Assembly: GCA_965637545.1 (NCBI GenBank)
Contig: OZ281500.1
Location: 21,018,001-21,082,000 of the forward strand
Source: Phallusia mammillata
Lineage: Eukaryota
Reading direction: 5' to 3'
Length of the DNA: 64,000 bases
Shown here: in pieces, positions 19,001 to 63,551 of the stretch
Position numbering within the stretch: position 1 is the stretch's first letter
How the letters are laid out: each line of letters starts with the position of its first letter
Translations under genes and position numbers: made by a program
The notes under the pieces: model-generated
Databases searched by the model: none
The model's input: the letters and a program-made list of their open reading frames with translations, nothing else
What the model was told of the DNA's origin: nothing

Positions 19001-22000
19001 ATAAAAGAATAATTAAACAGATTGCAAAAATTTGCGTCATGAAAAGTTTAACCTTTTGAGTAACTTACACCTAAAACTCTTGTAGTGCTGTTTCAGATCA
19101 TTTGCTACACATAACTCAATTCTAAAACTGACTGAAACCGTAGGCCTTACAATAATTCTAGAAAGTTCGTAAGCTTGTTTCCAATCTAACCAACGTAAGA
19201 AAACTTTTAAACAAAAATCAAGTTTATTTTTTGTCACATATCTTCAATTTTTCACCAGCCATCGTCATATGTACTGCATGTTGCTTGTGCTTGGTGTTCT
19301 GTTTCTGAATGATTACTACCTAATTTGTCAACGTTTCGGCAAGATTTTTCAGCGTTTTATGCTCATCGCTAGCACCATCATTAAGTTAATTCCTTCTGTC
19401 ATGTAACCTTGTCCATTTTACTTGTTTTTTTCTCTACCACTCTCCCATATAAAGTCAATTAACTTGTTATCAATTTTTTATTTTCCTCTCGATAAACTTT
19501 TTCAAAATTTCAAATTTATTTAAAATGTTGTAATAGGAGATTCAACCATCCATTAGTAAAAATATTTTACCTCTATAAGGCTAACGGATATTTTAGTGTA
19601 CTATTTGCCGTTTTTTTGTGGGCTGTAACGTTTTTGTGAAACAGGTGGACGACGCAGCCCTTCCCCCAAACGTAAGAGTACAGACACTTCAGCAAGAAAC
19701 GGTAAGTGATAGGGTAGCAGGGTGTATAACATAAAAAAAAACACATATGAACCTTAAACACTAAAAATAGCGTTGCTTCACATAAGCTTCAGTAGAAAAT
19801 TAAAGGTTATGTGTCCCATACCTGTACCACAAAACAACATTAAGTTGCTGTATACAGTGAGCCTTGGTTAAACTGGATTCGGTTAATCCGGATCATCGCC
19901 TAATTCGGACAAAACTTGAAGTACACATGGTTTGTAATGTGGCAAGGCTTTAACTATTCGACTTCGGTTAATCCGGATCTTCGCCTAATCCGGACATTTT
20001 TTTCGGTCCAAGCGGGTCCCGATTATCACCGAGGTTTTCTGTATTTGAATTTTAAAATCCATTACCCTTCCACAAATAGCACTTCTATGGAAAATAAAAG
20101 TCAGAAATAGTAAGCCCCACAGAAGGGTAATTTTTCTTGTAATTTGTTTTTAGCAACAAAAGAATAAAATCAAATTTAAAACTGCGCAAATTACAAACAC
20201 ACTTTGACCTTGGGTAACCCGATTATCTTTTTGCTGACTGGCTACAGGTCATGCGAAAGAGGGGCGTGGCGCCAACTACCTCCAAACTTACCAGCAGATG
20301 GTGAGCCAGGTTGAAAAGGCGGGAAAGTCCCGATTGTGGATCGGAAAAGACTACAACAACTTCATCGCCAAAGACCTCACAAACTTAGATGACCCCTTTG
20401 AAGGTTTGTGAGCACTTGGACCATTTGCTAGACCAGGGTTACGTTTTTCTTAATGATAAAGTTGTAAAAGGGCCGGGTTTTTCAGGTCGGGTTCTGGCTA
20501 TGGTTTAAAGGTTTAGGTCCTAAATTGTTGTGAGACCAACCTAAGAAATCCAAAATTCCAGATTAAAAAACATTTTTTCAAAAACTAGAAAACATACTTA
20601 GTTACTTATTTCGAATACTGAATAGCAGGTAATGGGCATGTAAATTATTTACTTGAAATCTCGCATGATTTTCTTGCGTACAGATGTGCTTGACCGAATG
20701 ACCACTCCCCGTATGCCGTGGCACGACATCGCCTCTGTGACGTACGGAAAAGCGGCACGTGACGCAGCTCGTCATTTTATTCAGAGGTGGAACTTTACCA
20801 AGGTGATACTTAAAAGTAAAAAAGTCCCTATTCGGTGGCCTGTGATTTGACAAACGAGTAAAACTTGGGAGTTTGTCAAATTGAACGGTTGTTTTATGTA
20901 AAAAAGCGAGAAACACGTGTAGTTAATGTTTTAGCATTTTAAATATCGTTAAGCCTTTTATTTAACCTTTTATTTAGAAAATATCCACTGTTCGGTCATT
21001 TGGTATATGTCCTATGTTTGTGATCACAGATCCAGAAGAAAAAGAAGGGAGAGGACGTTCCCTTCCTCCTTCCCAAGTCCTACAGTGATGAGGCATTTAC
21101 ACTTCCGCCTGATCTCATACATCCGGAAGCAGTAAAAGCAAATGTTCAGGTAATCATCCAGAATTGTTTTGAATAAAGATTCAAAATCGAATTTATATGG
21201 TAATCTCTTAGACCAGCGTTTTTTTAAATCTGCTCTGAAGCATACGAGGCAGGCAGCGGTGCTTAAACCTATGAGCCTGTGTAGCTCAGTTGGTAAAGCG
21301 CAAGTCCCGGGAAAGACTTCTGTCGTGGGTTCGAATCCCACCGCAGGCTAGATTTTTCTCGTCTACGCCTTGCCATATATGTGGGAATGCTTATGCCGGC
21401 TTGATCCGTAGTAACGACTTCAATGGGCCTGGCGTACTATCACTTAATGGAATTTTACTACGAACATACTCGGCCACAAACCAAATGAAACATTCACAAT
21501 TTCAAACTTTATATCATGACCACAATCCGTTCCCCTACTGTGTATACTGTCTTATTTCGCTTTAAGTGCCATTTGTTTGTGCTTTTAATGCATAACATTG
21601 TGTTTAGGTGCTTCGGTCGTCTTCGGAATGGTCAGCTGGTATCTGCGAAGTTGACAGATCGATCCAGAACGCTTATCTTTATGCCATCGAGAAATCGGAA
21701 CATTTCATATACCTTGAGGTTTGGGCCATTGAATATCAGCATTAGTCTGCCTAATTGCATATGTGGGGATCGTGGAACCGTAGCCTAAAGCACGTAAACT
21801 AATCGTCAGTCTAATCACATTATCCGGCTGATCGCATAAAAAAGCTTGGCAAACTATGCGATTGGTCAAATTCGTTTTTAATTGATTTATGATTATAATT
21901 GATAATTGTATTGGTTCCTTTCTTTAAATGGTGGACCGACTTTTCAAGTCTTACTATAGCTGTTATTAACCGATTTGCTTGACTGTTTTACTTTTACTTT

Positions 22001-35791: not shown

Positions 35792-38700
35792 ATGGATATT
35801 GACGACTGCTATACAAAGGTCGTTGGCACATTCGGAAGATACCAACTATGGGTGTTTTTTGTTTACCTTACAAATATCGTAAGTACTAACTACTAAGTGT
35901 AACTGCATTTATATGTACATTTTTTTAACTACTTGGTGCCAAAAATTCTAAAATGCTTTTAAATTGTGTTCTTTTTTTTTACAGAATGTTTTGTGGATTA
36001 AATTTATTATATGATATAAACCATTTTTCTTCTTGATTAAAGATACAATTTAATTTTGCAGATAATAATATGTCCTCAAACATTCTTAACCGTTTTTGTT
36101 GGTGCAAAGCCATGTGAGGTCAATTCTACAAATCCTCGAGTTGATAGCAGAAGTTTTATCGGTGTTGAGGTAAAACCATTGAAACTTTACAATGAGCTTC
36201 ATGACACTTTAAAATAGCAATAACCTGATTCAGGACTAGGGTTCTTAACATTTAACATTTCTGGGGTTGATTTTAAGCAAGTTTTTGGATGTGTGAAATA
36301 GCATGTTAAAAACTCTACCTGTAAAATTTAGCTGCAAATTATGACTAAAATAATCAAGAGAACAAAGGTTGATAACAAATTTTCTAAGACAAACCAAGTA
36401 AACACATACTTACTATTCACTGATTGTTTCGTAAGATCCCATTTTATCATCGTGCATAAATGAATTTCTTTTTGCAATTCAGCTAATAGACCGTTTTATT
36501 GCAGATTGAATTCCAAATTGTAGCCTATTTTTATCAAAACAAGGTTTCCAAATTAAAGCTGATTTATCCGAATTGTCTTGTAATTTTATCAACTACATAG
36601 GCCAATGTACAATGAAAATAAATATATATATTTTCTGCACTTGTTCCAACACTTAATGTAGTCTTAGATGAGCTTAAAATAGCAAACCATTAAAAACTCA
36701 TTACAAAATAAAATTCTAAATTAAAATCTTATAAAATACATCACCAGTTGTTAATAAATCATTGTGCTCTTATCAGTGGAATTTGTTGGACAAAGGATGG
36801 ATTGAGGACATAATACAATCAATGTTTTTTGTTGGTTATCTCTTTGGAGTTATTGTTTTTGGTCAGCTGTCAGATAGGTTTGGTCGACGAGTTATTATGC
36901 TTGCTGGTGAGTGAAATTACTTTGTGTGTAAAATTGTCTGCGATGTTTACTTTTTATTTAGTTGTAACATAGTAAAGGGTATCTCATTGAGTTAAAAAAT
37001 TGTGGTTATTTGGCAGTGCATGTGTTAGTTTAACAAATATTTATAATTGTTTGGACAAAGGTGGAAATCCTAATTGTAAACATTTTTTGTTAATGTTTTG
37101 ATATTTGTTTGTGCACATTTTGATCATTTTGCCATCCTAAAACAAATGTATGTGATCTAATAAGATTATCTCTTTCTCATCAAAATTACAACTAACTATC
37201 CGAGCTTTTATAACTGGCTGTGCATTCTTTTGTTTTTTAAATTGGGTAAAAACATTTGTTTTAAATCAACATATCTTTTTACGGACTGGAGCTTGCATAC
37301 TCCCTTGTGCAGTTATATTGATCATTGTTGGAACTATCATTAATAACATTTTTTGATTCAGGTTTTCATTTGCTGATGCCTGTGAGTTTGATGTCTGGGT
37401 ATAGCTTCAATTGGCAAACTTTTGCAGCTACTAGATTTGGTGTTGGCTTTCTTTCAGGTGGTGCAAGTTTGGTGCAGTTTATTTATACACAAGAAATGAT
37501 TGGTCGCAAATGGTGGGCTTACACAGGTATCTATGTTAGACTTTTACACCTAAATTTACCATAAAAATGTGTTGGTTTTACACCAAAGATGAAACATATT
37601 CATATTGGGATCAGCCCTGAAGTGTCTATGGCTATGCAGACCAGCAATCACAGCATACATATCGATAAATCATAGTATGCCAGGCTTATTAAAGGCATTA
37701 TACCGAATCAGCTGGTCTCCCAAGCATTCCCATATGGCAAGGCACATGCTGGAAAAATCTAGATTGTGATGGTATTCGAACCCACAACAGGAGTCTTTCC
37801 CACACTCATGTTCTACCAACTGAACTACACAGGCTCACTGGAGAAACCGCCGAAAGTCAAATCAGTACAACGTACAATGATTCGGTACAACGCCTTTGAT
37901 AGGCCTGGCGTACTATGATTTTACACCAAATAAACCTTTTTATATAAGTAATAGAGTATGAATGTTTTTACTAGGCCTGGTGGTAAGTGCTACATTTGCA
38001 GTGGGAATTGTGTTGACCTCTGTAACAGCATTTTACATTACTCCATGGCGTCTACTCACAAAGACTATTGCCTACCTTCAGATTATTCCAACGCTTTGTA
38101 TATGGTTAGTACATCTAATGAAATTTAGTTCCAAACATAAAAATACATTTTAAATGTTTTTAAATATACATACTTTAGTTTAAAGTTACATGATGAAGCA
38201 TTGATAAGAAAATACTTAAACAACAACAAAAATTGTGAAAACTATTCTTTAAAATCACCTGTTTGTAGTGGTTTTATAGCATGACTACCTTGTTCTTTAC
38301 AGTTGTGTGTTTTAACAATTTTGTTTTATTTTTTATTTTCTTATCCCACGAGATAGTGTGATAAGCCACTAACTTTTGCAAATCAGGAAAAAATATCAGG
38401 GCTGGTAGTTTGTCTGAAAATTTATTGCAGAAATCATACTTTGTTTATAAGAAACACAAACATAAACAACCATTTAGATTTTTTGTTTTCATAAATTTTA
38501 CATGAAAAATATAAATTTGACTGCAGGACATTGTGTGAGTCTCCACGATGGTTGTATTCAAAGGGCAGATTGGTTGAAACTGAAATGCTGTTGGTTAAAG
38601 TTGCAAAGCGCAATGGTCTCAAGGACCCAGGTAAAGCAACTTCAAGGCCATATTGCATTTTTGAGGGTTGTGGTATCAGACCTGTACACTTTTTTTTAAA

Positions 38701-45809: not shown

Positions 45810-48800
45810 TTATTTTGCTTCTTCATCATTCTTGTAATGTGACAAAACCCTAGCGCTCGGGTCATCACATTCAATCCACTTTGGCATCCATTGATAAGGA
45901 ATAAGCTTTGCAAGCTTTGATCCAAATCTGTTCTCAAATACGGATCTGTAATAATATGCTTCCTTGCTTCGTGGTGTGTTGTGTGGAAAGGTTTGGGCAG
46001 CGTTCTCCATTTGTTCATCAGTCACCTTGTAAAATCATTGATTTTATTAAAGGTTTTGTGCACTTTTTTGTGACATACTTCTTTTTTAAATCGTTGCTAC
46101 GTCCCTGCTCCAGTCATTTTGACTGATAACGACCTTTGATATCTTATACTGGCAGAGACAGTGAAAAAAATCAGAAAAAAGGCGTTTATTGATCATCTAC
46201 TTTTTAGGTTTGCTTTAAGTTGTCCACTTGTCATAGTCTGCATACCTAAATACTATTTCACGCATTTCTAACCTTATCTTCGATGTGGTCCTGAAGGATT
46301 TCGTACCACGATTTCTTTCTTGAAGACACACCGTCACTAAACGCTTCTTTGCTTCTCCATAAGATTTCATTGGGAAGTAAACCAGTTCCATCGAAGGCCG
46401 AACGTACCAAGTGTTTTTCCATTCCATCCTAACAGTTTCATTGATTTAATTTCATGAAAAACAGTAAGTCATTCGTCCTCGAGTTTTTAAGATATATACG
46501 AACATATATTACGCTCCACATTTATAATTGCGGACAATTTTCAACAAACGATGCACCCGCATATAGTGTAACCAATATGCATTGTACACGATGTTATTGA
46601 ATAGGAAGTGTTTTTCATACACCTTTACCTTGGGCATTCTCATATCTGCCGGTAGTGATAAGAAATACGAAGTAAATGCGTGATCAAGAAATGGAGCTCG
46701 AACTTCCAAACCATGTGATGCTGTACTTCGGTCCGTTCGCAAAACGTCGTACATGTACAAGTCCGTCAATAAACGTCTTTAAATACGAGAAAATCGTGGG
46801 TTACAACTATTTCTGTTTTAAAATAAAACCATGAAAATATCACTCTTACTTGCTCTCTTTGTCGCCCTCTTCCGGCGACGGTTGTTTATGGAAATAAATG
46901 TAGCCTTGTGCAAGCTCGTCGGCGCCCTCTCCTGACATAATTACAATCGTGTCGGTCTCGTTGCTGATGTACTTTGCCAGTAAATACATTGCTGCAGGAA
47001 AAATCACCACGGTATTATTTTTTGTCATGTTCGTTGACAGTCAAGTTTCTTACGCGTCGACGCTCTCACGGTCGTGACGTCATAGCTCTCCAGCGCATAG
47101 ATGACGTCATCAACAGCTTGTAGACCCTCATCTTCTGTGATGGTTACTTCGTGGTGTTCGCTTCCTATGTGAGCAGCCACCTAAGTGCATAAATATTGTG
47201 TAAAAATAGCTGTAAGAAACACCACAAAGCCACTATTTGGGTTTGATTTTTTTTTGTTAATATGTGGGGCCGTGGTATATATGCATTGACGTTTTACCTT
47301 TCTTGCGGCAATAACATCAGGGCTTTGTCCCATTCCGATAGAAAACGTAGGAAGTTTTAGTGAGGAATTTTCCTTTTTAATTTCTCCTGCAGCGATAGCA
47401 GCGACCAATGACGAATCCAAACCACCTGGTGATAAAAAATACGTGAAGAAATTGTCAACCAAGTTCTTCTGAGCGTCCTTTTAAAAAATGTGGCACTGTA
47501 ACGCTTTTACGAAGTTCGTGTGTTAAAGAAAACAATGGTGTAAATTTTTCATAAGATGCCAAGGGGTCTACAATAATGCAAGCATTACCTGATAAAAGAC
47601 TTCCAAGTTTTCTCGAAGACATCAGACGTTTTTTGACGGCGCTGCAAAATAATGTCCGAATATTTTTCTTCACTGTTTCGCAATCGAAACCTGAAATAAC
47701 AACAAAAATCAGTAAAAGATGGCTTGTATTTCATATAAGCTTCTACAAATTAACCATTAGGATGGTTGCAATCTTTTGCTCTGGTCGTGTTTGATGCAGT
47801 CGCCAATTATGTTATACTATTTTGGTAGGAACCATAAAGCTAAGCTATTTTTGCTTTGAAAACATCTTAATTGAACCAACCTTTTTCAAGTTGTATTCTC
47901 TGATACTTCCAGTGCAGTGGGTCGTCAACAAAGGAATGAAACTGTTTCTTTGTCTCCAAGCTCAATTTTCCATCTTTTGATACGTCATAGACGTTGTAAT
48001 GAGCAGGGGGGAATGGCTCGAAAAATTGTTGCACGCCATTTTGACCCTTCGTTATGTCAATCAGCCCTAAATATATACATATAATATATATTTAACAATG
48101 TGAGAGTGTGGAATGAAAGCAACGAACATCTAAGGATTTAACGTCGCAAATAAAGTCAAAACTAAAAAAGGCATACCCTTGGCTTCAGAGCAAGCACCAA
48201 TTTGTCCAGTCGTTGTAGCAAAATAGAACATTGGTCTGACGCCATACGTGTCACGTGCAAGTATAACTTTACGCCTCCTGCTGTCGACAATAATGATTGC
48301 AAAAACTCCATCCAACAAGGCGCACGTTTTCTACAAAGCAAAAATGAGGTTAATGTATTTGCTTCCTGAACGAAAACCCAATTGCACCCAAACCATCACC
48401 AAGTCGCAAATAGCTGTGCAAAGATTGGCACAGAGTGAAAAAAACTGGAACTGTTCTTTTTTAAGTTATTGGTTAACCCGTTTGTATGAGTGTATGAAAA
48501 TATGAAGATGTTAGCATCTTACTTCAATACCAAACTTGTTGTAGAGATGAAGAATTATTTCGCAATCCGATTCCGTCTCGTAATCAAAACCAAATTCCTC
48601 TGTCAACTGCAAACATTACAACATATAGATTAAGCACAAATCACACCTCATCAAATTACTGTGAAATTAAACTTCAAAGTAAAGCTTTTTAGTGCAACGA
48701 CCACTTTAAAAATAAAAATCAGGGCTTTGGGTCGCTATAAAGCAGAGAAAATAATTCTTACCAGATAATGAAACAAGAGACAAAGCGCATTTTTCAATTT

Positions 48801-49384
48801 TTTACTGTAAATATAAAACTTACTCGTTTGTAGTTGTAGATTTCTCCGTTGCATAGCAATGTAAGATGGGGGTAGGCCTGTATTCTCATTGGCTGCAAAG
48901 ATATACATGTTACTGGATAATTGCTCCAAGCTGTAGAAAACTTGACTATAGTGCTTAAAACAGTACCAACCACCACAAAAAATAAATCTTACAACAGATT
49001 TGCAAGTTGGCGCAAAAATACCACCTGCAGGGAAAATCTCAAGATAGAAATCATGCGCTCTAATTGTATTATTGGTTATTAAAAAATCACAGTTTTAAGG
49101 TGCGGCTTTCTGTTGGAATTTACGTGCTAATTTGGTGATTAACCTTTAACCCACAAATTGTTGTAATCAGCGGATTGTACTTGTAATAATTACATAAGTA
49201 ATACCTGCATGCCGTTGACACCACCTACTATAGCAAGTCGGTAAAATGCCACGGTGCACGTTTTCATCGAGCTGACATTTTGTAGCTGGAAGTTATCCGG
49301 TCCTCGGTGAGCGATTTTGAATCCACTTGTGAAAAGGTCAACTTCACTGGGGTCAAAACCGAATATACCCCAAATTCCACACAT
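45810..49384 (-). CDS. ASNS: Asparagine synthetase (glutamine-hydrolysing), copy 1
   Basis: 12 coding exons (minus): 49384-49205, 48892-48824, 48606-48523, 48330-48177, 48066-47881, 47690-47589, 47425-47298, 47180-47054, 46991-46850, 46776-46629, 46428-46273, 46025-45810. Motifs: MCGIW (Ntn catalytic Cys), [57 protein letters not shown]. Confidence 0.95.
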
Positions 49385-49525
49385 GGTTGTAAAATGTACT
49401 ATACTAAACGAAAAAAATCTTTAGTGAAAACTGTACTAAAAAAATAGTAAAATTTTCATCTGAATAAGTCAAATGTATTTTTATGTTGACTAAGTATTGC
49501 TCATCCAGCAGTTTTATTGTAAACA

Positions 49526-50310: not shown

Positions 50311-52208
50311 GATAAAAGAACACTGGGAATGTGTCCGACGTAGACTGTGGGTTGAAGCAAATAGAAACATAAAACATGGTTATATTATATACGCAGCGTA
50401 ATGCGATACAGTATTATTTAGTTTTTTTAACAGACCTGCTTGTTGTAAATAAAACGAATAGCGATTGATTTAAGTCGACTTTGATCCGATCAACATGTTT
50501 TTATTTCGCTGCGACAGCAGTTTAGGTGTACAGAAATAGTAATCATGTAACGATCATCTGTAAACTGTTGTTGATCTGGACTTTAATACGATTTGTGCCC
50601 ACAGTTTTGACACAACATATTCCAAACACCCGTAAGTGGTTCAATGTAGTTTTTCAAAATCGGTTTTATTGACTAAAGACAAGCATGGGCACCGGCAGAA
50701 AACTTTCCAAGTGGGTTCGAATTTTGACACAAACATATACTTACATGGATGGATTACGATTTTAAGTAATTATGTACATTTAGGCATTGATTATATACAG
50801 TAGAATTGCGTTGACTAAAACCTAATACACTCAACGACGTAAAAGCCACGCGCCCAACACGCATTTGTCTTGACCGCGACAAGAAAAAAGGTAGACATTG
50901 TTAACCACGCTTGTTAGACTTTTACCTTTCTCTACTTTACTTCTCAGAACACTCATGGTACAAGTGTTTTGTGCTAACTAGCAAACCAAGACTTGCGATC
51001 CAAAGGCCCTTGTGTGTTTTTGTGCCATGTGGATGTTCTGTCAGTAGTCCTCGTTTTAAATGAAGGATAAAACGTTAAATCACCAAGTAGTCAAATTATC
51101 TAGAAATAGTAAACGCAAGTTACAGGAACCGCTCCTTAATGGTGACATAATATTTACCTACGCATTAATTTTACTGTAGTAAATAACTGCAACTTTAGCT
51201 TTGAAACGAGGGAAACAGCACAGACCTGCGGCGAAAATTCCGTCGATTAACGCATCAAAACATTGACGTCATGATATCATTTTTACGTGCGCAGTGTGCG
51301 TTTCTCCTTAGTGTTTTCAGGGGTCGTAAATTTCTATTTTTTCGTGTCTGACTCACAATAGAACAATTGAAATCCGATATATTTTTTTTATCTGGGATTG
51401 ACGTATCCTGGAACACGTGTGTTATTGTTTAACTGACTGCGCGGTCTTTTAATCGTTAAAACACTGCCCAACGATAAAATCAAAGAAGTATATTTAAAGT
51501 AAAAACTTTAAAATTGATATATGTGCAAAATCTACGTGATTGAGCTTGGTTATTATGTTTCTTTTACTGGCTTTAGACTACAAGTTCATAAGCATAGAGG
51601 ACTTTTAATCTAAATATAAGTTGTGAGACAAGTAATTTCATTTACAATGTTAGGGTTAAACAAGTGGTACTTGAACATATGTGCCAAGCCTCAATTTGAA
51701 TATTAGTCACTTCCGTTTTTACACCGACATCTAAAACATCCTTGTTATGTTAACTGTCTGTAGGCAGCCGAAAATTCTTACATATTACCTTTATTCTTAA
51801 ATAATGCAAATAATGCGTCGTTTTGCACGCTTGGTTTAAGCTACAAAACTGTTTTTAACGACACCTGTATACTTGTCTGTGAATATTTTTGAAATATTAG
51901 TATAAGCCCACACCTTTTATTTTTTTATAATATCTACTTATTAAAATACAATCCATACTTACTTAAAAAAACGATTCAAATAACGATAACATGTAACCTA
52001 TCTTGTCATCATTTAAAACTTTATCGCATCAGTATCACCCTCAGGATTTCACAACACATGCACACTTAATTGTTTTGTTTTCCACCAGCTGATATAACAA
52101 GGTACTTGACAAGTGTTAGTCCGGAACTTACGTAAGACCAGCTTTTTGTGTTTGTAATCTAAAGCCAATGATGACGTTTTTGTAAAAGCATAGAGCCAAT
52201 AAATGATA

Positions 52209-52260
52209 AGCTGCAGACAGTGCACACTCTTTCGACCTATAAGGTCTCATCAGTGCAGCT
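52209..52260 (-). ncRNA. Type I hammerhead ribozyme, intact core, in the putative 3' UTR of ASNS copy 2
   Basis: Minus strand reads AGCTGCA-CTGATGA-GACC(TTATA)GGTC-GAAA-GAGTGTGCACT-GTC^TGCAGCT: 7-bp stem I, CUGAUGA and GAAA core, 4-bp stem II, GUC cleavage triplet (cut between 52216/52215). One G-G mismatch in stem III. Confidence 0.85.
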
Positions 52261-52520
52261 GGTGACGAGAGATCGGCCGCATTGGCTAGTGTAGCCATTC
52301 AACGGCACTCCAGTTTGTTGGGAGCACAGGGTACAACCCCATGCATCACCTAGTCTGTGCGATGCCACAACTGGACATACAGCACAGATGAAACTGGCTC
52401 ACAGTGGCCAAGCAACTGCTTGGGAACCACAGTGAATTAGTCGGCTCAGTGTCACAGTATCAATGTAAAAGCATAGAGCCAAAATGCTACACTAGCCAAT
52501 GCGGCCGATCTCTCGTCACC

Positions 52521-52572
52521 AGCTGCACAGATGAGACCTTATAGGTCGAAACAGTGTGCACTGTCTGCAGCT
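52521..52572 (+). ncRNA. Hammerhead ribozyme copy with a core mutation (CAGAUGA), inverted partner of 52209-52260
   Basis: AGCTGCA-CAGATGA-GACCTTATAGGTC-GAAACAGTGTGCACTGTC^TGCAGCT. All stems are perfect but U4 is replaced by A. Confidence 0.75.
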
Positions 52573-52631
52573 TAATGATGACGTTGTTTTGAAAGGATGG
52601 TCATTTTAACGTCATATAGCTTAACAAGTGT

Positions 52632-55600
52632 CTAAATACGTATTAGTGTGTTATCTTTCGAGTCTTCGTCATTTTTATAATGGGATAGCACTCTTGCGCT
52701 TGGGTCATTTGGATCACTGGATTCGATCCATTTTGGCATCCACTGATAAGGAATGAGCGTTGCAAGCTCAGAGCCAAATCTTTCTTCAAACACCGATCTG
52801 TAGTAATATGCTTCCTTGCTTTTTGGTGTCACATGAGGAAATATTTCAGCAGCATTTAACAATTGCTCATCAGTCACCTGCAAATAAAATAGTTTCTTGA
52901 AACACTATTAGCCTAATTATTTTTAATTGTTATTTAATGATCAGAATGTTCAATATTACCCCCTTTAAACGACATACCTATGATAGTCTTGACAAACTAC
53001 ATAAAAATTCTTGACAAACTACATGAAACTACCTTTGATGTAATTACCACAATTAAATTGTTTGCCATAAAATTACCACAATGAAAATACCTGCTTCGAA
53101 TTTTTTTGCAATCCAATTACCACGATCAAAATACTTAAAAAAAATTTACCACGAAGAAAAGATCCTGTCATAAAAATACCGGCAATTGAATTACCACGAT
53201 GAGCCTACCAGGATAAAACAGTTGCGATGAAATTACTTGCGATAAAATTATTGGCAATGAAACAAACACCAGGAAGTTGAAAAAAACTACCACGATGAAA
53301 AAGCTGCGTTAAAAACACCACTGTGTTGAAACGATAAAACTACTTTGTTATGGGCTAAAAACAACGACTACTTGCCCAAATATATTATTAACATCAAATT
53401 TCACCTTATTCTCAATGTGATCCTGAAGAATCTTATACCAAGATTTCTTACTGGATGCCATTCCGTCACTAAAACCTTCTTTTCTTCTCCACAAAATCTC
53501 ATCAGGTATCAACTCAGCTCCGTCGAATGCTGAGCGTACGAGATGCTTTTCCAGTCCGTTCTGCGTATGTTGTAAGCAGTTTCAAACAATTAAACTGAAG
53601 ATCTTTTCGTTGCAAACTAATTTCTTGAACTTTTTCTGTATGTCCCTCTAAAGTCTAAACCATTAGTTAAAGGCCACCCTTAGAGCATTTAATAGTGGCC
53701 ATTTGTGCTTACTTTGAGGGAAGTTGTTCTTACTTTGTAAACCCCTCGTTTAGGAAGACTTTAATCTGTTTTGCTATTTTATTGTGTCAATTTGTAGAGA
53801 TTTTAATTCGCATGCAATTCTGAGATGCGTTTTAATAGGCAGTTTCGATTCTAAAAAACAAGTCAACTAGACCAGTGGTTCTCAACCGCCGGTCCGCGTC
53901 AACTTTCCTGCCGGTCCGCCAAATATAATTATTACGATTTTATAACTCAATTACAAAATGCAAGATGTTGACGGCAGAGAAATCGTGTGGAAGTAAACGC
54001 TCTACTTCCTTGCAGAAATTTTATTAAACCGCGTTTAACACGTATAATATCCAACAGACATACTTCTTTTGAATTGCATATTTTTGTCGGAATTACATTT
54101 TGGGTTGATTTTGAAAGCCCACTGGCCCGCAAAATTTGTTTTGAGAGTTTACCGGTCCGTGAATGAAAACACGATGAAGATTTCGTATTTTTTGACTTGC
54201 GATAAAGTCCTTTTTAAAACACTTTAGGAACACTGGGATTTAAGAAACAAACTGTTGTTCATAGTTTCACAAAATACGCCTTTACCTTGGGCATTCTCAT
54301 TTCCGGCGGCAGTGATAAGAAATAGGAAGTAAATGCGTGATCAAGAAATGGGACTCGAACTTCTAAACCATGTGATGCCGTACTTCGGTCCGTACGCAAC
54401 ACGTCGTACAAGTACAGATCTTTCAGAATGCGTCTAAAAAACAAGGCATTCATCTGGTGTGTTTTTCTTAAGCCGATTGGACTATGTTGCAACTTATTTT
54501 GCGGGACTGACATAAACCGGGATTCAAATAAACGTTTTGAAGGTTAACTGTTTTTTTGCATTTTAAATACACTAAGCTTTAACATACATATAACTTTTGA
54601 ATTTCGTGACAACTTTTTTACAGTGAAACAACTATTTTAATAAGCTACACACTGAGAACGTATACTATGTACGTAAAAAGAAAACAGAAAAAAGCCGAAA
54701 TTTACTTGCTTTCTTTGTCGCCCTCTTCCGGCGACGGTTGTTTGTGGAAATAAATATATCCCTGTGCCAGCTCGTCGGCGCCCTCTCCCGACATAAGCAC
54801 AATTGTTTCAGTTTTATTTTTAATGTAGTTCGCCAGGAGATACATTGCTGTGTGATAAAAAAACAGAGTTATTCGACACAACGATTGGTTCAGTTTGATT
54901 CACTCAATCACCACATACGGACTGAAGCTCTCACGGTTATGATGTCATAGCTCTCAATCGCGTAAATTACGTCATTTACAGCTTGAAGTGCTTCTTCAGG
55001 ACTGACAATTACCTCGTGGTGTATGCTTCCAATGCACGCCGATACCTGTTTTGCATAAAAATGTGAGTTTAAAATTCAGTACATTTAGTAAAATGCAGAC
55101 AGTGCACAATGTTTCGTCCTATAAGGTCTCATCGGTGCAGCTGGTGGCAAGAGATCGGCCGTATTAGCTAGTGTAACCAACTAATGGCACTCCAGTTTGT
55201 TGGAAGTAACAGACAGAAAAGCTATACTTCGACCAATTCGACTCGATGCCGCAACTGGGTACAAACCACAGAGGAAACTTTATTGTCTTGATGTTTACAT
55301 ATCAATGTAGCCTATTTAGGCTGTGCTAAAGAATTTGTGAAAAAAAACATTGCTTTCAAACTGTTCATTTACATTTCCAATTTTTCTGACTTTACCTTTC
55401 TAGCTGCTTTCAGATCGGGACTTTCATTCATTCCAATTGAGAAGGTGTTGAACGGGAACGGAGAGTTATTCTCCGATAATTTTCGAGCGGTAATAGCAGC
55501 AACCAACGATGAGTCCAAACCACCTGGAGTTATGAAATCATAGATTCGAAATTAGCCAAGATGAACGTACATTCATTACTACAATCAAAAGTATTGGACT

Positions 55601-57947
55601 AGCGGCCATGGCACAATCATGTATAACCCATAGTAAGCCGGGCCTATACTTTTGGCGTTATGTTGCATCAACCGTGCAAGGTATAGGTGATGGAAAGACA
55701 TGCAGACCAAAAAAAAGGGAATCTGAAATTTTATGTTAATGCTTCTATCAGGTAAACATATCGTCTCTTATAAAACGTCATTAAAATAGGTGCCACCTGA
55801 CAAAAGGCTTCCGACTGGTCTTGTTGACATCAATCGTTTTTCGACTGCTTTGGTGAATAATGTCCGAATATTTTTCTTGATCGACTCAAACTCAGATCCT
55901 AAAAACAACACAATCGGTTTGTTCGCGGGCCCGATTTTTTTACACAAAGCCTGAACTGAAAGTTGCTGAAATTTCAACATCGCTACAATATACACTCCGA
56001 ATCTAGCCCGTTTTATCCAAGTATTGCTATTTTGTGTCAATTTGTAGAGATAGAGATTCGCATGCAATTCTGAAATGCGTTTTAAACAGGCAATTTCGAT
56101 TCTAAAAACAAAGCCAGTTATATTGTTTTTTATTTGACTGATAAATACCCACAAAATAGCAATAGGGAACTTTTTGTTTTAAAAGTTAATGAAATCACGA
56201 TGTCAATTGACAGTGGCTAGCCCGTTATACTTAAATTCAATTTAAACCCGATCCGAAAGTCCTAACCTAGAACTCTAAGTAACAAACCTATTTCAAGCCT
56301 AATGTCGTGATATTTCCAGTGAGTTGGCATGTCAACAAACCAGTGGAATCTTTTCATTTCTTCTAAACGTACACTACCATTGCCATCAACATCATAAACG
56401 GCGCAGTGACCTGGTAGAAATGGCTTAAAAAACTGTTGCCCTCCGTTTTGCTTCTCCCAAATATCGACAAGACCTGAAAAAAAAGTTTGGTTTCAGAAAA
56501 CATCGAAAAAAGTATTTCAAGCTTTTTTGGGCAATTAATCAAAAAATACCTTTTGCTTCGGAACAGCAAGCAACTTGTCCAGTCGTTGTAGCGAAATAAA
56601 ACATTGGTCTGACGCCGTACGAGTCACGTGCCAGCATAACCTTGCGCCTCCTGGTGTCGACAATAATAATTGCAAAAGTGCCGTCCAGCAGCGAACATGC
56701 TTTCTACAATAACAAACTGGTTTAATTGTAACTGGAAATAATTTTGTGTATAACTTGATACAAAAGAGTTACCTCAATACCAAACTTGTTGTAGAGATGA
56801 ATAATTATTTCACAATCAGATTCGGTTTCATGTTCAAAATCAAACTCTCTTTGAAGCTGTGATAAAAGTAAGATATAATGTAGTTTGTTCTTATTTAGCG
56901 TTAAGACTTGAGGGGAGAAATTTACTCTAATTTTTACATGTGGTTTGTAAATAGACATCTCTGGGAATATAACCATATAAAAGTTCATAAAAGAACCAAT
57001 TTTAAAGGGTCTTTGAATGATTTAATATCTATGTATATTTTAGAGAGAGAAAAAAAAAAAAAAAAAAAAAGTATTTTGAATTGTTAGAGGAGGAAGGTTG
57101 AGAACGACTGTACTAGACCATTATCTTGATGAAAGCGTTTCGTATGGGATATGGAAACGTCGGTTGTTTATAATAAAACTGCTGGAAGAGAAATACTCGT
57201 TTATACTTATGCCTGGCAGCAACATCTTATTTGTTAAACTTCTTATTGGTTTCATCGTTACTTTGTATTCATACGAGTATTGCACATTGCGTAAAGTCAA
57301 GTTAAAGTTTTTACCCTTGTGTAGTTGTAGATTTCTCCATTGCACAGAAGGGTAATATGGGGGTATGCTTGAAGGGTCATAGGCTGCAATTCAAATACAA
57401 ACAAAAGGGTAAATAAATACATAAGGAATTCAAGTACGAGCAGAAATTAGTTTCTGAATAATACAACTCAAGTTAAAATAGCAAAAAATCATTGTAAAAT
57501 TTGTCAGAATTTGCAGACAGTGCACACTCTTTCGACCTATAAGGTCTCATCAGTGCAGCTGGTGACGAGAGATCGGCCGCACTGGCTAGTTTAACCATTC
57601 AACGGCACTCGAGTTTGTTGGGAGCACAGGGTACAACCCCATGCATCACCTAGTCTGTGCGATGCCACAACTGGGCATACAGATACTGTGCACTGTCTGC
57701 AGCTTATCATTTATTGGCTCTATGCTTTTACATTGTCAGAATATATTTTAAAGTAATCGAAATGTACCTGTATACCAGTAGCCCCTCCCATTATAGCAAG
57801 CCTGTGAAACGCCACGCTGCATGATTTCATTGAGCTGATATTCTGAATTTGGAAATTATCCGGCCCTCGGTGAGCGATCCTGAACGCGCTTGTGTAATTT
57901 TCGACTTTACTTGTATCAAAACCGAATATTCCCCAAATTCCACACAT
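52632..57947 (-). CDS. ASNS: Asparagine synthetase (glutamine-hydrolysing), copy 2
   Basis: 12 coding exons (minus) with the same phases as copy 1: 57947-57768, 57383-57315, 56856-56773, 56703-56550, 56473-56288, 55898-55797, 55523-55396, 55045-54919, 54847-54706, 54433-54286, 53560-53405, 52877-52632. Motifs: MCGIW, HRGPD, NGEIYN, SGGLDSS, SGEGADE, KEGFSDG, DPSAR. Confidence 0.95.
53030..53330. repeat. Degenerate minisatellite (AATTACCACGATGAAA-like units) in the last intron of ASNS copy 2
   Basis: Many imperfect TACCAC(G/A)AT units spaced roughly 15-30 bp apart. Confidence 0.65.
55094..55142 (-). ncRNA. Degenerate hammerhead ribozyme copy in an ASNS copy 2 intron
   Basis: AGCTGCA-CCGATGA-GACCTTATAGGAC-GAAACATTGTGCACTGTC^TGCA: core U4C and a stem II mismatch. 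The repeat body continues to ~55265. Confidence 0.65.
57121..57230 (+). mobile_element. Penelope-like pLTR remnant with a degenerate hammerhead
   Basis: TTGATGA...GAAACGTC followed by AATAAAACTGCTGGAAGAG...TATGCCTGGCAGCAA. Parts of this sequence are shared with 8806-8925, ~15575-15600 and 49505-49567. Confidence 0.55.
57511..57732 (-). mobile_element. Truncated retrozyme-like insertion with an inverted tail, 10-bp TSD
   Basis: TTGTCAGAAT at 57501-57510 and 57733-57742. The body is nearly identical to 52212-52382; inverted segment 57687-57732. Confidence 0.75.
57512..57560 (-). ncRNA. Type I hammerhead ribozyme, intact core, in the first coding intron of ASNS copy 2 (sense strand)
   Basis: Same sequence as 52209-52260 but with stem I shortened to 4 bp (TGCA/TGCA). 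Lies in an insertion 57511-57732 flanked by a 10-bp direct repeat TTGTCAGAAT. Confidence 0.8.
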
Positions 57948-58224
57948 GCTTAAAACTGTAGGCTTACTTGTGCTAAATCCCCTGCAGAACTATGAAGTGG
58001 CATTGATATTGTTGAGAAAACTGCGTATGGGAAGCACGCTGTTAAATCAGCGACAAAAGCCGAGACCATGAGATGAATAGGAAATTAATATAGTGGCTTT
58101 GGAAAGGATTTCCTAATATTTTGTTTTCATGATTTCCGAAGCAGCTTATTATTATGTATATCTCTTAGTCCGTACAATACATATGTTTTGTACATGGATA
58201 ACATAAGGCAAGGTTTATGTGTAT

Positions 58225-58976
58225 GTAACGTTTCTAGGTAGCCTTTTTAGTCTAAATTAACTATTTGAGCTATCATAAAAGCGCCACTAAATTTAGAGTA
58301 TAATCTTACGTTAATGTAGATTATATTATCTAGTTTATTCTATTAATGCGTGAGTTCACTAATTCGCTGATTGCTTTTTGTGTAACAACTAACTTTAGTT
58401 AAAGTTAAATTACTTTATGAAGATAAAACCTGTCTATAAACCAAACCTAGTTCCACTCCACCAAGTGATTTTAATATAGGCTATAACACACAAACAATTA
58501 TTATACACAAGACATAATGCTAATACATACAACTGTCAACACCACAGTAATCTGGCATTCAGTTCTAAAGAAACTGCATTCAACAAGCGTACAACTTCAC
58601 AGGCAACAACAGGGCAATCAGTCCAGTACACACGCTGGACGACTGCCGGAGGATAACACACTCTGTTTCGTAACGAAAGGTATAAATACTATGTCGTAGG
58701 TATGTGAACGCTAGAAAGGGCGATTACATGAAAAGCGCCAATACAAAAGAATGATGAAAGTTACACAATCAAACAGAATTAGCGGGCTATCGTTCATTTG
58801 AAGCACGACATTTTGTAGCTTAATTTGGCAGCGTTTACGTCATAGGGATTTCTCCCGAGTATACAGCGTTGGTCAGCAATTGACCTGTCCCGAGGACAAA
58901 TTGCACGACGTTTTGTTTCAGGTTGTTGGGAAACAGATTATGTTGTAATCAAACATGTTGGTTTTAAACCCAACAG
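58225..58976. repeat. Proximal copy of a local ~750-bp non-coding duplication (distal copy 60531-62107)
   Basis: Near-identical sequence at 60531-60615, 61170-61180 and 61505-62107, where the distal copy is interrupted by two transposon insertions. Confidence 0.9.
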
Positions 58977-60615
58977 TGTATAAAAGGCACAGTTATAAGT
59001 CGGGCCGGGTTTTTGAAGTCGCGTTACGGCTTCAGTTTGAATAAAACAGGCCTACATTTGCACTCGGTCTCATTTATGTCGTTATTTTATTGAATCTTAC
59101 TTTCGCGCATAATTCCAGCTTATTCTTGTCTACATAAAAACCCGGTTCGGGTCCCAATTTCGAGCTCGCTTGGGTTGAATAGAGTTGAGTTTGTTTTGCT
59201 CGGTGAAAAAAAACGTAGTACACAATTGCTCTACAATATTCACTTATGTAAGGGTGGACACTTAAATGACCTAATCGTTGCCAAAATACAAATTATGGTG
59301 TCTAGTAGAGATGTACTGAATCGGCTAAATAGGCTAAAAACAGAAATATTAATTTCGCCTATTTGGGCATCGTCAGTTTCCTTAATTTCGCCTATTTGGG
59401 CATCGTCAGTTTCCGTCTCGATGCCCAAATAGGCGAAATTAATATTTCTGTTTCTCAAAAATAAAACATTACACTGACGCTGATCGTCTGCTGCTCTTTT
59501 TGAGTACATTTTGTGTATATCTGATAAGTGTAGACAGATCCGTCGGTCACCACCCAGTTACACAGGCTCATTCTTGTAGTCTGCTATGACATTACACTTA
59601 CATCTTTTGAATTGATTTTTCTTTCATGCTGCATGCACTGCCGTTTTACCTTTTTACTAAAGGTTTTTCTGGAGGACTAGCCATGTTTGACTTTGCCCAA
59701 ATCCCTTTAATTATTCTGAATATACTTCCTTGGTAAAAATAGCCAAGGCAACTTTTCACTTTTGATCTGTCCTTTCTAATTGATCTGTCCTTTCTGCCAC
59801 CATTTAGTCTACCCTTTTTCTTTGCAAAACACACTGAAGCATCTGTTCACAGCTTAAGGTTCAGCTTGACAAAGCTTCGGCAGCCTAGTATACGTCGCCC
59901 ATAGTCGGATGTAAAAGGGTTGTTTGGTATTTAGACAGTGTGTCCCAAACTGTGAGTTGGTCGCATGAAAATTTATATGAGTCGCTTGTTTTTGTAGCAA
60001 AAACATCTAATTCCTAACTTTTTTGTAGCGGTTTGTTTATTTCCCCAAACAGTTGCATAATACTAATTTCATGACAACTTACTTTGACGTATCAATGTTT
60101 GATTTTGTTTGTAACGTCATACATTTTTAACCTCACTGGTGAGTGTTGTGTGGCTGATAAATGCATCTGTGGTGCGCGTGGCCGTTCGTTACTACAATTT
60201 AAAGAGATATACCACCATCCATAACCACCCAAGCTCCTGACCTTGTCAGGACCGAGTCCTGGAAACTCCACACAAGTGTCTTGCACTTAAAAGCCAGAAC
60301 AAAAAAATTAAGAGATGAAAACACAGTGCTGTTTTATGTATACCGGGGGAAAAAAGCGTTAAATTTACACATGTGCTCTTGCGATTGGCTCTTGCACAAT
60401 TCCACAAGTCCTAAAGTGTGTGTGCCACTGATAAGGTTGAAGGGCACTGGCTTTTATTCGGTTAGAATTTCAGCGCAATAAAACTAATTTTTGGACCTAA
60501 TTAAGCGCAATAAAACTAAGTTTTCTTACTGTAACGTTTCTAGGTAGTCTTTTTAGTCTAAATTAACTATTTGAACTATCATAAATCGCCACTAAATTAA
60601 GAGTATAATCTTACG

Positions 60616-61161: not shown

Positions 61162-63551
61162 ACCTTACGTTAATTTAGATCAAGGGTCTTAAACTCAAAC
61201 TACTTTACGGGCCAAAAACAAACTTTTAAGTACGTCGAGGGCCGCACTATCGATATAGAAAAAAAAATGCAAGATTAAAAAGTAAAATGTTCATTTATGC
61301 CATTAGTTACTTTAAAAAACAATTTTGTAATAAATAACAAACCGATTTACAGTGTAGCAAAGTGAAAGAGTCAACTGTGCTATATTGCTTTGTGCGGAAA
61401 CAATGGCCTACAATGACGCAAAAATGTGTTAAGTATGACGCACCAATCACAATTGCTGATTTAAAAAATGGGCTCGTTTAATCATTCTGTAAGAACGTTG
61501 CATATAACAACTAACTTTAGTTAAAGTTAAATTTCTTTATGAAGATAAAACCTGTCTATAAACCAAATCTAGTTCCACTCCACCAAGTGATTTTAATATA
61601 GGCTATAACACACAAACAATTATTATACACAAGACATAATGCTAATACATACAACTGTCAACACCACAGTAATCTGGCATTCAGTTCTAAAGAAACTGCA
61701 TTCAACAAGCGTACAACTTTACAGGCAACAACAGGGCAATCAGTTCAGCATATACACGCTGGACGACTGCCCGAGGATAACACTCTCCCTTTCGTAACGA
61801 AAGGAACCGTATAAGTACTATGTCGTAGGTATGTGAACGCAAGAAAGAGCGATTACATGAAAAGCCCCAATACAAAAGAATGATGAAAGTTACACAATTA
61901 AACAGAATTAGCCGGCTATCGTTCATTTGAAGTACGACACTTTGTAGCTTAATTTGGCAGCGTTTACGTCATAGAGATTTCTCCCGAGTGTCCAGCGTTG
62001 GTCAGCAAATTGACCTGTCCTGAGGGCAAATTGCACGACGTCTTGTTTCAGGTTGTTAGACCGATTATAGTTTGTTGTAATCAAACATGTTGGTTTTAAA
62101 CCCAACACTTACCTGACAATATGTAGACTTGACATAAAATAGTGGTGTCAATGATTAACTTCTTGTTGGAAGCCGGGCTTTTCGGGCCGGGTTCGGGCTT
62201 AGGTATTTGTGAGAAAATGGGCTTAAAACGTGCCTGACTTTACATTCCGTGTTCGCCATTTAAAACAATATTACTCAGCTAAGTAACTCTGGTTTTGACC
62301 TAATGCCCACCCTACTCTAAAACGTATTGTTTACCCCATTGCCTACTATCATTCATTGTGTTTGTTGTCTATCTCTTTTTTCTTTCTCGTCCTTTGTTGC
62401 AAGGCTTTCGTGGATAGGCCTGTCAATCAAAATTTCGGGCCTAAACGGGCTTCGCAAAAACGTTTCGGGTTCGGGCCGGGTTCGGGCTCAGATTTCGGGC
62501 CCGCTTGCAACTCTGGTTGGAAGCAACAATTTAAGACAATAAAACCGCACATGTTCACTGAACTGTTGTGATAACGAACAAGTTACTAAAATTTTGCATG
62601 TTCAAAAAATAGGTTTATTTAACTCCGATCATCAAAATAGTGTCTAGCCTATCTTGCGTCTGTGATCTAAAAAGTTTTGACAAATAAGTTACTGATAATA
62701 ATTAATCTATCATATCCTGAGAGTAAAAAAACCTTTCGTTTGCGAACGATGGCGGACTTTATTTTTGCAACTGTTTGATTTTTGTCGTAACGGGTAATAA
62801 CTATTTTGGGTGTCGATTTAATGGTAAAAACAAAGATATTTGTTATGAATTGTACGCCATATATACAGTGATGGGATTTAATTTTTTTGTCAGCCGATTC
62901 TTTTACAAAAGTCATATTTTTCAGCCGGTTCTGTTAAAAAGTTGCTCTAGTCTAAATTAACAAAACGCAATTGATGAAAGATTATTCCTTATAGATTTAA
63001 TTTTTGTCCAGTCAACCATAAACAACCCGAATGCGGAATTTACTTTTCACAATTTAGAAACTCTGAGTGTTGTGTGTTAAATTGCGTATTTGATTTTTGG
63101 CAGACATGCGATGTGTTTAAAAAAACAAGCCTGGAAATTGTCTCAGTGGGAATTGACTTCGCAAAATGAAATCACTCTTTTTGGCTGGGTTTAAAACTGT
63201 TGTGTTTATCTTTATGAGCCTGACGTGTTTTGACAAATCCTCGCAAATTGTCTTAATTAAGAATGCGTGTTGCTAAAATATTGCATGCATATAATCTAAT
63301 TTTATTTTTTGTCTAACAACAACAAAACATTTTTTTAGATAATCATTTCCGTTTATTGACGCGACATGAAAAAACCCGACTTGACAAACGTTGACGACTT
63401 CATGTTTTTTCTCTCCTGAATTGAGGGTGTAAAATAAAGAAGTGTTAAAATTTTGTGTCAATATATTAGACGTAGTGTTTAACACAAAGCAAATAGGTAG
63501 CTATATCAAAAACATGTTTTTATTTGTCACCTAATGTTTCTGTTGTGTTTC

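What the first reader, a model, noticed from the sequence alone, without database searches (positions are those of the whole stretch)
52167..52585. Retrozyme-like hammerhead element, with its own antisense arm, in the putative ASNS-2 3' UTR
Seen: a TSD-flanked (AATGATGACGTT) 395-bp insertion. It holds one ~283-nt monomer ending in a type I hammerhead with an intact core (CUGAUGA/GAAA/GUC) on the ASNS-2 sense strand, plus an 89-bp inverted copy with 2 mismatches. The first canonical AATAAA on the minus strand after the stop (52632) is at 51916-51921, so the insertion probably lies in the mRNA. Established: short non-autonomous repeats with type I hammerheads (Schistosoma SMalpha, newt satellite 2, metazoan retrozymes) self-cleave and can circularise, and a 3'-UTR hammerhead can destabilise mRNA (rodent Clec2). 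Inference: the antisense arm is transcribed first and can sequester the ribozyme in a long dsRNA hairpin. That would give either a neutralised insertion or a switchable decay element (hairpin versus cleavage) on an amino-acid-starvation gene.
Basis: partly seen in the sequence, partly recalled or inferred. Interest (0 to 1): 0.9.

Follow-up and report, generated by a model that had tools for sequence, protein, structure and literature searches.

The report
Caged hammerhead relic in ASNS UTR
A small jumping-gene copy carrying a slightly damaged self-cutting RNA motif sits in the tail of an asparagine synthetase messenger RNA, but a mirror-image arm left by the insertion process pairs over the motif, so it is most likely neutralised transposon debris rather than a gene switch.

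Summary
The anatomy is real: a 12-bp target-site duplication, a 283-nt unit ending in a type I hammerhead, and an 89-bp inverted arm with 2 mismatches. Spliced RNA contigs from two studies enter the arm, and RNA continues beyond the ribozyme, so it lies in the 3' UTR. The ribozyme is not intact: the sense copy has C15.2G, a G-G mismatch in helix III beside the cut site, and the arm's copy has U4A. The hairpin beats the ribozyme fold by about 70 kcal/mol, forms before the core is transcribed, and survives simulated full A-to-I editing of the arm: a lock, not a switch. The element belongs to a high-copy family whose preferred ends (+9 and +35 after the cut site) match both ends here, the Penelope-like inverted-copy-plus-tail signature, so the arm is best read as an insertion by-product. 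Both junctions occur in all four samples. Earlier scan notes report the same arrangement on other DNA of this genome (DCAF11 and PSMD3 UTRs). Verdict: a non-LTR retrozyme-type, probably Penelope-mobilised insertion; a new member of a known kind.

The parts
52167..52178 (+). Target-site duplication, copy at the tail end of the element (12 bp)
52574..52585 (+). Target-site duplication, copy next to the inverted arm (its first base also fits the arm)
52181..52482 (-). Direct segment: one 283-nt unit plus 19 nt of terminal redundancy; non-coding; circular form folds better than shuffles (z = -3.0)
52209..52260 (-). Type I hammerhead on the ASNS-2 sense strand: helix I 7 bp, helix II 5 bp, helix III with C15.2G mismatch at 52229; predicted cut 52216/52215
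52181..52215 (-). 35 nt after the cut site (3' strand of helix I and its extension); 52181 (+35) is a family-wide preferred end; the 26 nt beyond +9 are the one-sided Penelope-type tail
   Evidence: (loose ends)
52486..52574 (+). Inverted 89-nt arm: a second hammerhead copy on the plus strand with core mutation U4A at 52529, ending 9 nt after its cut site; in the mRNA it is the antisense arm, transcribed first
52483..52486 (.). Inversion junction with about 3-4 nt that fit either segment
52632..52873 (-). Last coding exon of the ASNS-2 paralog, spliced to 53401 in RNA contigs; the stop lies 46 nt before the TSD
51816..52166 (-). Host sequence downstream of the insertion covered by RNA contigs in two studies (strand not shown by contigs); AATAAA at 51921-51916
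57501..57742 (.). Second insertion of the same family in ASNS-2 intron 1: 10-bp TSD, tail on the plus strand, inverted long arm on the sense strand, same C15.2G, 97% identical over 171 nt

Best explanation
This is one insertion of a high-copy, non-coding, 283-nt hammerhead retroelement (non-LTR retrozyme type), copied into the ASNS-2 3' UTR by target-primed reverse transcription, most likely by a Penelope-like element's enzyme. Both nicked target strands primed on an uncleaved multimeric or circular RNA. One primed at +35 after the cut site and made the direct unit. The other primed at +9 after the preceding ribozyme and made the inverted arm (inferred). Both start sites lie just 3' of the ribozyme, so a two-ended insertion carries outward-pointing hammerheads, and whichever strand is transcribed, the ribozyme is preceded by its complement. 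In the ASNS-2 mRNA the arm zips onto the nascent RNA before the catalytic core appears, the hammerhead cannot fold, and the message is read through uncut (computed; read-through seen in contigs). The C15.2G mismatch weakens the ribozyme further. The result is a tolerated, probably near-neutral insertion that leaves an 87-bp double-stranded stem in the UTR.
For: Shown: TSD, unit and arm; four more family copies in the window, one with the mirror architecture and its own TSD; summed contig depth over the element thousands of times the flank in two DNA runs (rough, not a copy number); many genomic contigs end at 52181 and 52207/52574 with unrelated AT-rich flanks (85 and 58 contigs in X1), the two ends used here; joints from about 52474 back to 52193 show head-to-tail copies elsewhere (table 5c); the direct segment starts at +12 to +17 and the arm ends at +9, nearly contiguous on a dimer template; spliced RNA enters the arm and RNA lies beyond the ribozyme. 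Computed: hairpin favoured by 70 kcal/mol; 42 bp formed before C3 is transcribed. Literature: an inverted 5'-truncated copy and a one-sided 30-40 bp tail are Penelope hallmarks (PMC8557442); the tail lies between two reverse-transcription start sites, both strands are extended, and uncleaved RNA is the main substrate (PMC11167929); opposite-strand hammerhead pairs 100-700 bp apart were described (PMC4209133); exon-overlapping retrozymes sit mostly in 3' UTRs (10.64898/2026.07.22.740005).
Against: No autonomous partner was identified here. No empty allele was seen, so the target site rests on the TSD alone. Presence in all four samples could reflect selection rather than drift. Contig depth is lower downstream of the element (48 vs 145 in X5; 28 vs 42 in X11), which partial cleavage could cause, although the tool warns that contig depth cannot rank parts of a gene. 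Folding is equilibrium modelling, not kinetics in a cell.
Confidence: 0.8

Rival explanations
1. The ribozyme is irrelevant, but the long hairpin has a real effect on the ASNS-2 message as a double-stranded element (ADAR editing, Staufen binding, nuclear retention or small-RNA production), in the manner of inverted Alu pairs, and may have helped or been tolerated during its spread.
For: 87-bp stem 58 nt after the stop codon, inside the mRNA; both junctions in four samples from four studies, including haplotypes that differ strongly 300-900 nt away; lower contig depth downstream.
Against: No excess of T>C changes (A-to-I on the minus strand) in the RNA contigs: 2 and 3 places, versus 3 and 9 in the DNA runs (contigs drop minor variants). 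Such hairpins are the family's routine insertion product. Fixation by drift needs no function.
Confidence: 0.13
2. One reading: the hairpin opens under amino-acid starvation or another signal, the hammerhead folds and cuts, and the message decays.
For: Core letters are present on the sense strand and the element is in the UTR; a 3'-UTR hammerhead lowers reporter output for Clec2d (PMC2950038).
Against: 70 kcal/mol gap, 83 at 18 C, and 37-63 after modelled full editing of the arm; C15.2G gives a hammerhead-fold probability of 0.003-0.012 even without the arm, against 0.28 for the arm copy with an intact helix III; no ligand-binding or trigger element; the paralog ASNS-1 has no such element in its 3' region; editing of the ribozyme strand would hit core adenosines (own knowledge).
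Confidence: 0.03
3. The inverted arm arose after insertion by a DNA-level fold-back (replication template switch) of a plain monomer, not during reverse transcription.
For: The arms are 98% identical and share a few bases at the junction.
Against: The arm abuts the TSD directly and ends at a family-wide preferred terminus; an independent insertion at 57501-57742 shows the same two-ended design with its own TSD; the arm has C at 15.2 where the direct copy has G.
Confidence: 0.04

Closest known systems
Metazoan non-LTR retrozymes (Cervera and de la Pena 2020, PMC7229834; Li et al. 2026, 10.64898/2026.07.22.740005)
   Same: Short non-coding unit (283 nt) with a type I hammerhead, TSD longer than 4 bp, no LTR, high copy number, head-to-tail junctions in other copies, structured circular fold; exon overlaps fall mostly in 3' UTRs.
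   Different: This copy is a dispersed monomer with an inverted arm, not a tandem array, so it is not 'active' by the 2026 definition; both ribozymes are damaged; helix III is 5 bp rather than 1-2 bp; circular RNA was not tested.
Penelope-like element insertions (pseudo-LTR, inverted 5'-truncated copy, 30-40 bp tail; PMC8557442, PMC11167929, PMC4209133)
   Same: Inverted copy at the 5' end, one-sided tail between two preferred ends, hammerheads on opposite strands about 280 nt apart, AT-rich targets, uncleaved ribozyme junctions in the DNA copy.
   Different: No RT or GIY-YIG reading frame; tail 26 nt here (31 nt in the 57.5-kb copy); no sequence link to an autonomous element was tested.
Rodent Clec2 3'-UTR hammerheads (PMC2950038)
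   Same: A hammerhead on the sense strand of a 3' UTR.
   Different: Clec2 ribozymes are active, lower reporter output and recur in several mammals; this one is a young repeat copy, mismatched in helix III and locked by an antisense arm.
Twin-priming 5' inversions of L1 and inverted Alu pairs in 3' UTRs (own knowledge)
   Same: TSD - inverted segment - direct segment - TSD geometry; a long double-stranded stem in an mRNA tail.
   Different: No poly(A) tail; the inverted segment duplicates the 3' part because the template was multimeric; editing was not seen in contigs.

Membership tests
Non-LTR retrozyme | Type I hammerhead within a short repeat unit | tested here: met
   Three-helix type I anatomy with core letters in a 283-nt unit; Rfam hits are below gathering score
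Non-LTR retrozyme | Non-coding, no LTR | tested here: met
   Six-frame translation is full of stops and there are no long direct terminal repeats
Non-LTR retrozyme | TSD longer than 4 bp when present | tested here: met
   12 bp here, 10 bp at 57501/57733
Non-LTR retrozyme | Multi-copy family with tandem (head-to-tail) organisation | tested here: inconclusive
   High copy and head-to-tail joints in other copies (table 5c; the 8.4-kb copy runs from tail into the next unit); no complete two-ribozyme tandem was read here; this copy is a monomer plus 19 nt
Non-LTR retrozyme | Self-cleavage and circular monomer RNA | not testable with these tools
   Needs in vitro cleavage and northern or divergent RT-PCR; circular fold z = -3.0 is only suggestive
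Penelope-like element (autonomous) | ORF with RT and GIY-YIG endonuclease | tested here: not met
   No reading frame in the 395 bp
Penelope-mobilised non-autonomous element | Inverted 5'-truncated copy and one-sided tail between two preferred ends | tested here: met
   Ends at +9 and +35 here, +4 and +35 at 57.5 kb; the same ends in many genomic contigs
Penelope-mobilised non-autonomous element | Sequence similarity to the pseudo-LTR of an autonomous partner | not tested
   The rest of the genome is not searchable here; the window holds no such partner
Regulatory 3'-UTR hammerhead (Clec2-like) | Located in the mRNA on the sense strand | tested here: met
   Spliced RNA contigs enter the arm; RNA contigs cover the element and beyond
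Regulatory 3'-UTR hammerhead (Clec2-like) | Able to fold into the active ribozyme in its mRNA context | tested here: not met
   Computed only: 70 kcal/mol against the fold, plus C15.2G
Regulatory 3'-UTR hammerhead (Clec2-like) | Conserved in orthologous genes across species | tested here: inconclusive
   Absent from the ASNS-1 paralog 3' region and from one distant ASNS locus, L001; no congeneric genome was available

The most novel reading that the evidence does not exclude
Two-ended Penelope-type insertion automatically cages its own ribozyme: both reverse-transcription start sites lie just 3' of the hammerhead, so on either strand the ribozyme is preceded by its complement. This would let a self-cleaving element survive inside mRNAs and seed long double-stranded hairpins in 3' UTRs across the genome, where some (this one, seen in all four samples) could affect the host message through editing or dsRNA-binding proteins. 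It predicts that core-intact sense hammerheads in exons are almost all caged, while uncaged ones are mutated or absent.
Probability: 0.25. Interest if true: 0.5.

Novelty: new member of a known kind. Interest (0 to 1): 0.22.

Why it matters
As a single locus it matters little: it is an ordinary product of a known class of element. I found no paper describing this family in ascidians (one search), so it is a small addition to the retrozyme catalogue. The point of wider use is the general one: the insertion mechanism itself can silence the ribozyme, which would explain how hammerhead elements are tolerated in mRNAs and is testable genome-wide. A starvation-controlled ribozyme switch in an animal mRNA would be very important, but the evidence here runs against it.

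Tried and rejected
Rfam at gathering thresholds found no ribozyme in the window; only sub-threshold hits. A metagenome scan for the ribozyme pattern found nothing. A protein search with the last exon gave only distant relatives; the best locus (L001) has no family copy, so no empty orthologous site was obtained. Werner and Uhlenbeck 1995 (helix III mismatches) is not held: the statement that mismatches in the inner pairs of helix III lower the cleavage rate is my own knowledge, with only an indirect citation in PMC3923133. Family allele frequencies at 52229 and 52529 were hidden among unlisted rows, so it is open whether C15.2G is a subfamily variant; its presence in the 57.5-kb copy suggests it predates this insertion or was converted between the two. 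I rejected 'intact ribozyme', 'recent polymorphic insertion' (junctions in all four samples, no empty allele among listed rows) and 'ADAR unlocks the ribozyme'.

Full report
Setting. The window is animal DNA of about 36% GC with no N. Two asparagine synthetase paralogs lie in tandem on the minus strand, at about 57989-52632 (ASNS-2) and 49420-45813 (ASNS-1) (Pfam Asn_synthase on two exons; solved ASNS structures at E about 1e-20). Earlier scan notes name the organism as the ascidian Phallusia mammillata; I did not verify this, as run names are coded.

Observation. The 12-bp TSD (52167-52178, 52574-52585) is perfect and that 12-mer occurs nowhere else in the window. Between the copies, read on the mRNA strand, come an 89-nt arm (52574-52486), a short junction, and a direct segment 52482-52181 whose first and last 19 nt are identical and 283 nt apart. 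The direct segment ends in a type I hammerhead with helix I of 7 bp, helix II of 5 bp, helix III of 5 positions, a predicted cut at 52216/52215, and 35 further nt that extend helix I. The arm is the reverse complement of 52207-52295 with two mismatches, and the whole folds as one hairpin (z = -24.7).

Each mismatch damages one ribozyme. On the sense copy, position 15.2 is G instead of C (52229), so the pair next to A15.1-U16.1 is G-G. On the plus-strand copy the core has U4A (52529). Even without the arm, the sense copy's hammerhead-fold probability is 0.003-0.012, against 0.28 for the arm copy with intact helix III. That inner helix III mismatches lower the cleavage rate is my own knowledge (Werner and Uhlenbeck 1995; not held). 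A U4 change is reported to lower activity considerably (U4C, PMC3088659). Rfam recognises both copies only below threshold.

Family. Four more copies lie in the window. The one at 57501-57742, in ASNS-2 intron 1, has its own 10-bp TSD, the mirror design, 97% identity and the same C15.2G, so that change is probably not a locus-specific adjustment. The 55.1-kb copy has U4C; the 8.4-kb copy runs from the tail into the start of the next unit. In two DNA runs the summed contig depth over the element is about 1,300-8,700 times the flank, and many contigs end at 52181 (+35) and 52207/52574 (+9) with unrelated AT-rich flanks; some joints show head-to-tail copies. Depth is only a rough guide, but the family is clearly abundant and has two preferred ends.

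Origin of the arm. This insertion uses those two ends: the direct segment stops at +35 and the arm at +9. The direct segment begins at +12 to +17 of a preceding ribozyme, so the two pieces are nearly contiguous on a dimeric or circular template, with 3-4 shared bases at the junction. An inverted 5'-truncated copy plus a one-sided 30-40 bp tail is the described Penelope-like signature (PMC8557442). In vitro, a Penelope enzyme cuts and extends both target strands, starts at two sites that bound the tail, and uses uncleaved RNA (PMC11167929). Hammerhead pairs on opposite strands 100-700 bp apart were noted in 2014 (PMC4209133), and animal retrozymes are now argued to be non-autonomous Penelope derivatives whose rare exonic copies are mostly in 3' UTRs (10.64898/2026.07.22.740005). 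The arm is therefore best read as a by-product of insertion (inference; no partner enzyme identified).

Expression and population. In two probable RNA runs from separate studies, a contig splices 53401 to 52873, crosses the stop and runs 30 nt into the arm; the intron has no coverage; further contigs cover the middle of the element and continue from inside its 3' end to at least 51816, past the AATAAA at 51921. The insertion is thus in the UTR, and RNA exists beyond the cut site; contigs do not give strand, ends or levels, and none spans the whole element. Both junctions are present in all four samples, including a DNA run whose flanking haplotype is very different, and no empty allele appears among the listed rows, so the insertion is common or fixed. 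T>C changes are no more frequent in RNA than in DNA contigs, so there is no sign of heavy editing, though contigs drop minor variants.

Lock or switch. Forcing the hammerhead fold in the UTR costs 70 kcal/mol at 37 C and 83 at 18 C. In stepwise folding the duplex is present from 11 nt into the complementary stretch and has 42 bp before C3 is transcribed. Changing all 20 adenosines of the arm to G leaves 63 kcal/mol; making them unpairable leaves 37. Switches work within a few kcal/mol (own knowledge). The Clec2 precedent involves an active, accessible ribozyme (PMC2950038). Nothing ties the element to starvation, and ASNS-1 has no such element.

Verdict. A real, TSD-flanked, 5'-inverted copy of an abundant retrozyme-type element in the ASNS-2 3' UTR, with a damaged and caged ribozyme; most likely near-neutral (0.8). 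A dsRNA effect on the message is possible (0.13), a switch unlikely (0.03). The scan's earlier notes describe the same arrangement in the DCAF11 and PSMD3 UTRs and as a dispersed family; these are unchecked leads, not support. New member of a known kind; interest 0.22.

Noticed in passing
window 57501-57742: Second TSD-flanked fold-back insertion of the same family in ASNS-2 intron 1, sharing C15.2G with the UTR copy; helix I of its sense ribozyme is cut to 4 bp.
   Followed up: partly
window 55094-55279, 8375-8486, 13280-13323: Older, more decayed copies of the family; all three copies inside ASNS-2 have the long ribozyme-bearing segment on the sense strand and each is damaged (C15.2G, C15.2G, U4C).
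   Followed up: partly
window 49564-49525, minus strand: An unrelated minimal, dimer-type hammerhead (long helix II, unpaired base after A9, palindromic 4-base helix III) of the Penelope pseudo-LTR kind, about 110 nt upstream of the first ASNS-1 coding exon; a degenerate relative lies at 57119-57197.
   Followed up: no
window 59340-59415, minus strand: Minimal hammerhead-like motif with a palindromic helix III and a loop 2 like the Rfam Hammerhead_1 consensus, inside a 34-bp tandem duplication.
   Followed up: no
window 45813-49420 and 52632-57989, minus strand: Two tandem asparagine synthetase paralogs, about 73-91% identical at DNA level in exons; both appear in RNA contigs (one search shows the ASNS-1 last exon as a cross-match).
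   Followed up: partly
window 51271-51998: The flank downstream of the insertion is a strongly diverged haplotype in three other samples (51957-51998 replaced by 11 letters; 51480-51815 replaced), while the 200 nt next to the insertion differ by only 1-2 letters.
   Followed up: no
window 21275-21349 (+) and 37761-37834 (-): tRNA-like Rfam hits, probably tRNA-derived short repeats.
   Followed up: no
window 58383-58975 and 61505-62107: A 600-bp direct duplication at 93% identity upstream of ASNS-2.
   Followed up: no
window 52987-53300: Degenerate ~15/29-bp minisatellite in the last ASNS-2 intron.
   Followed up: no
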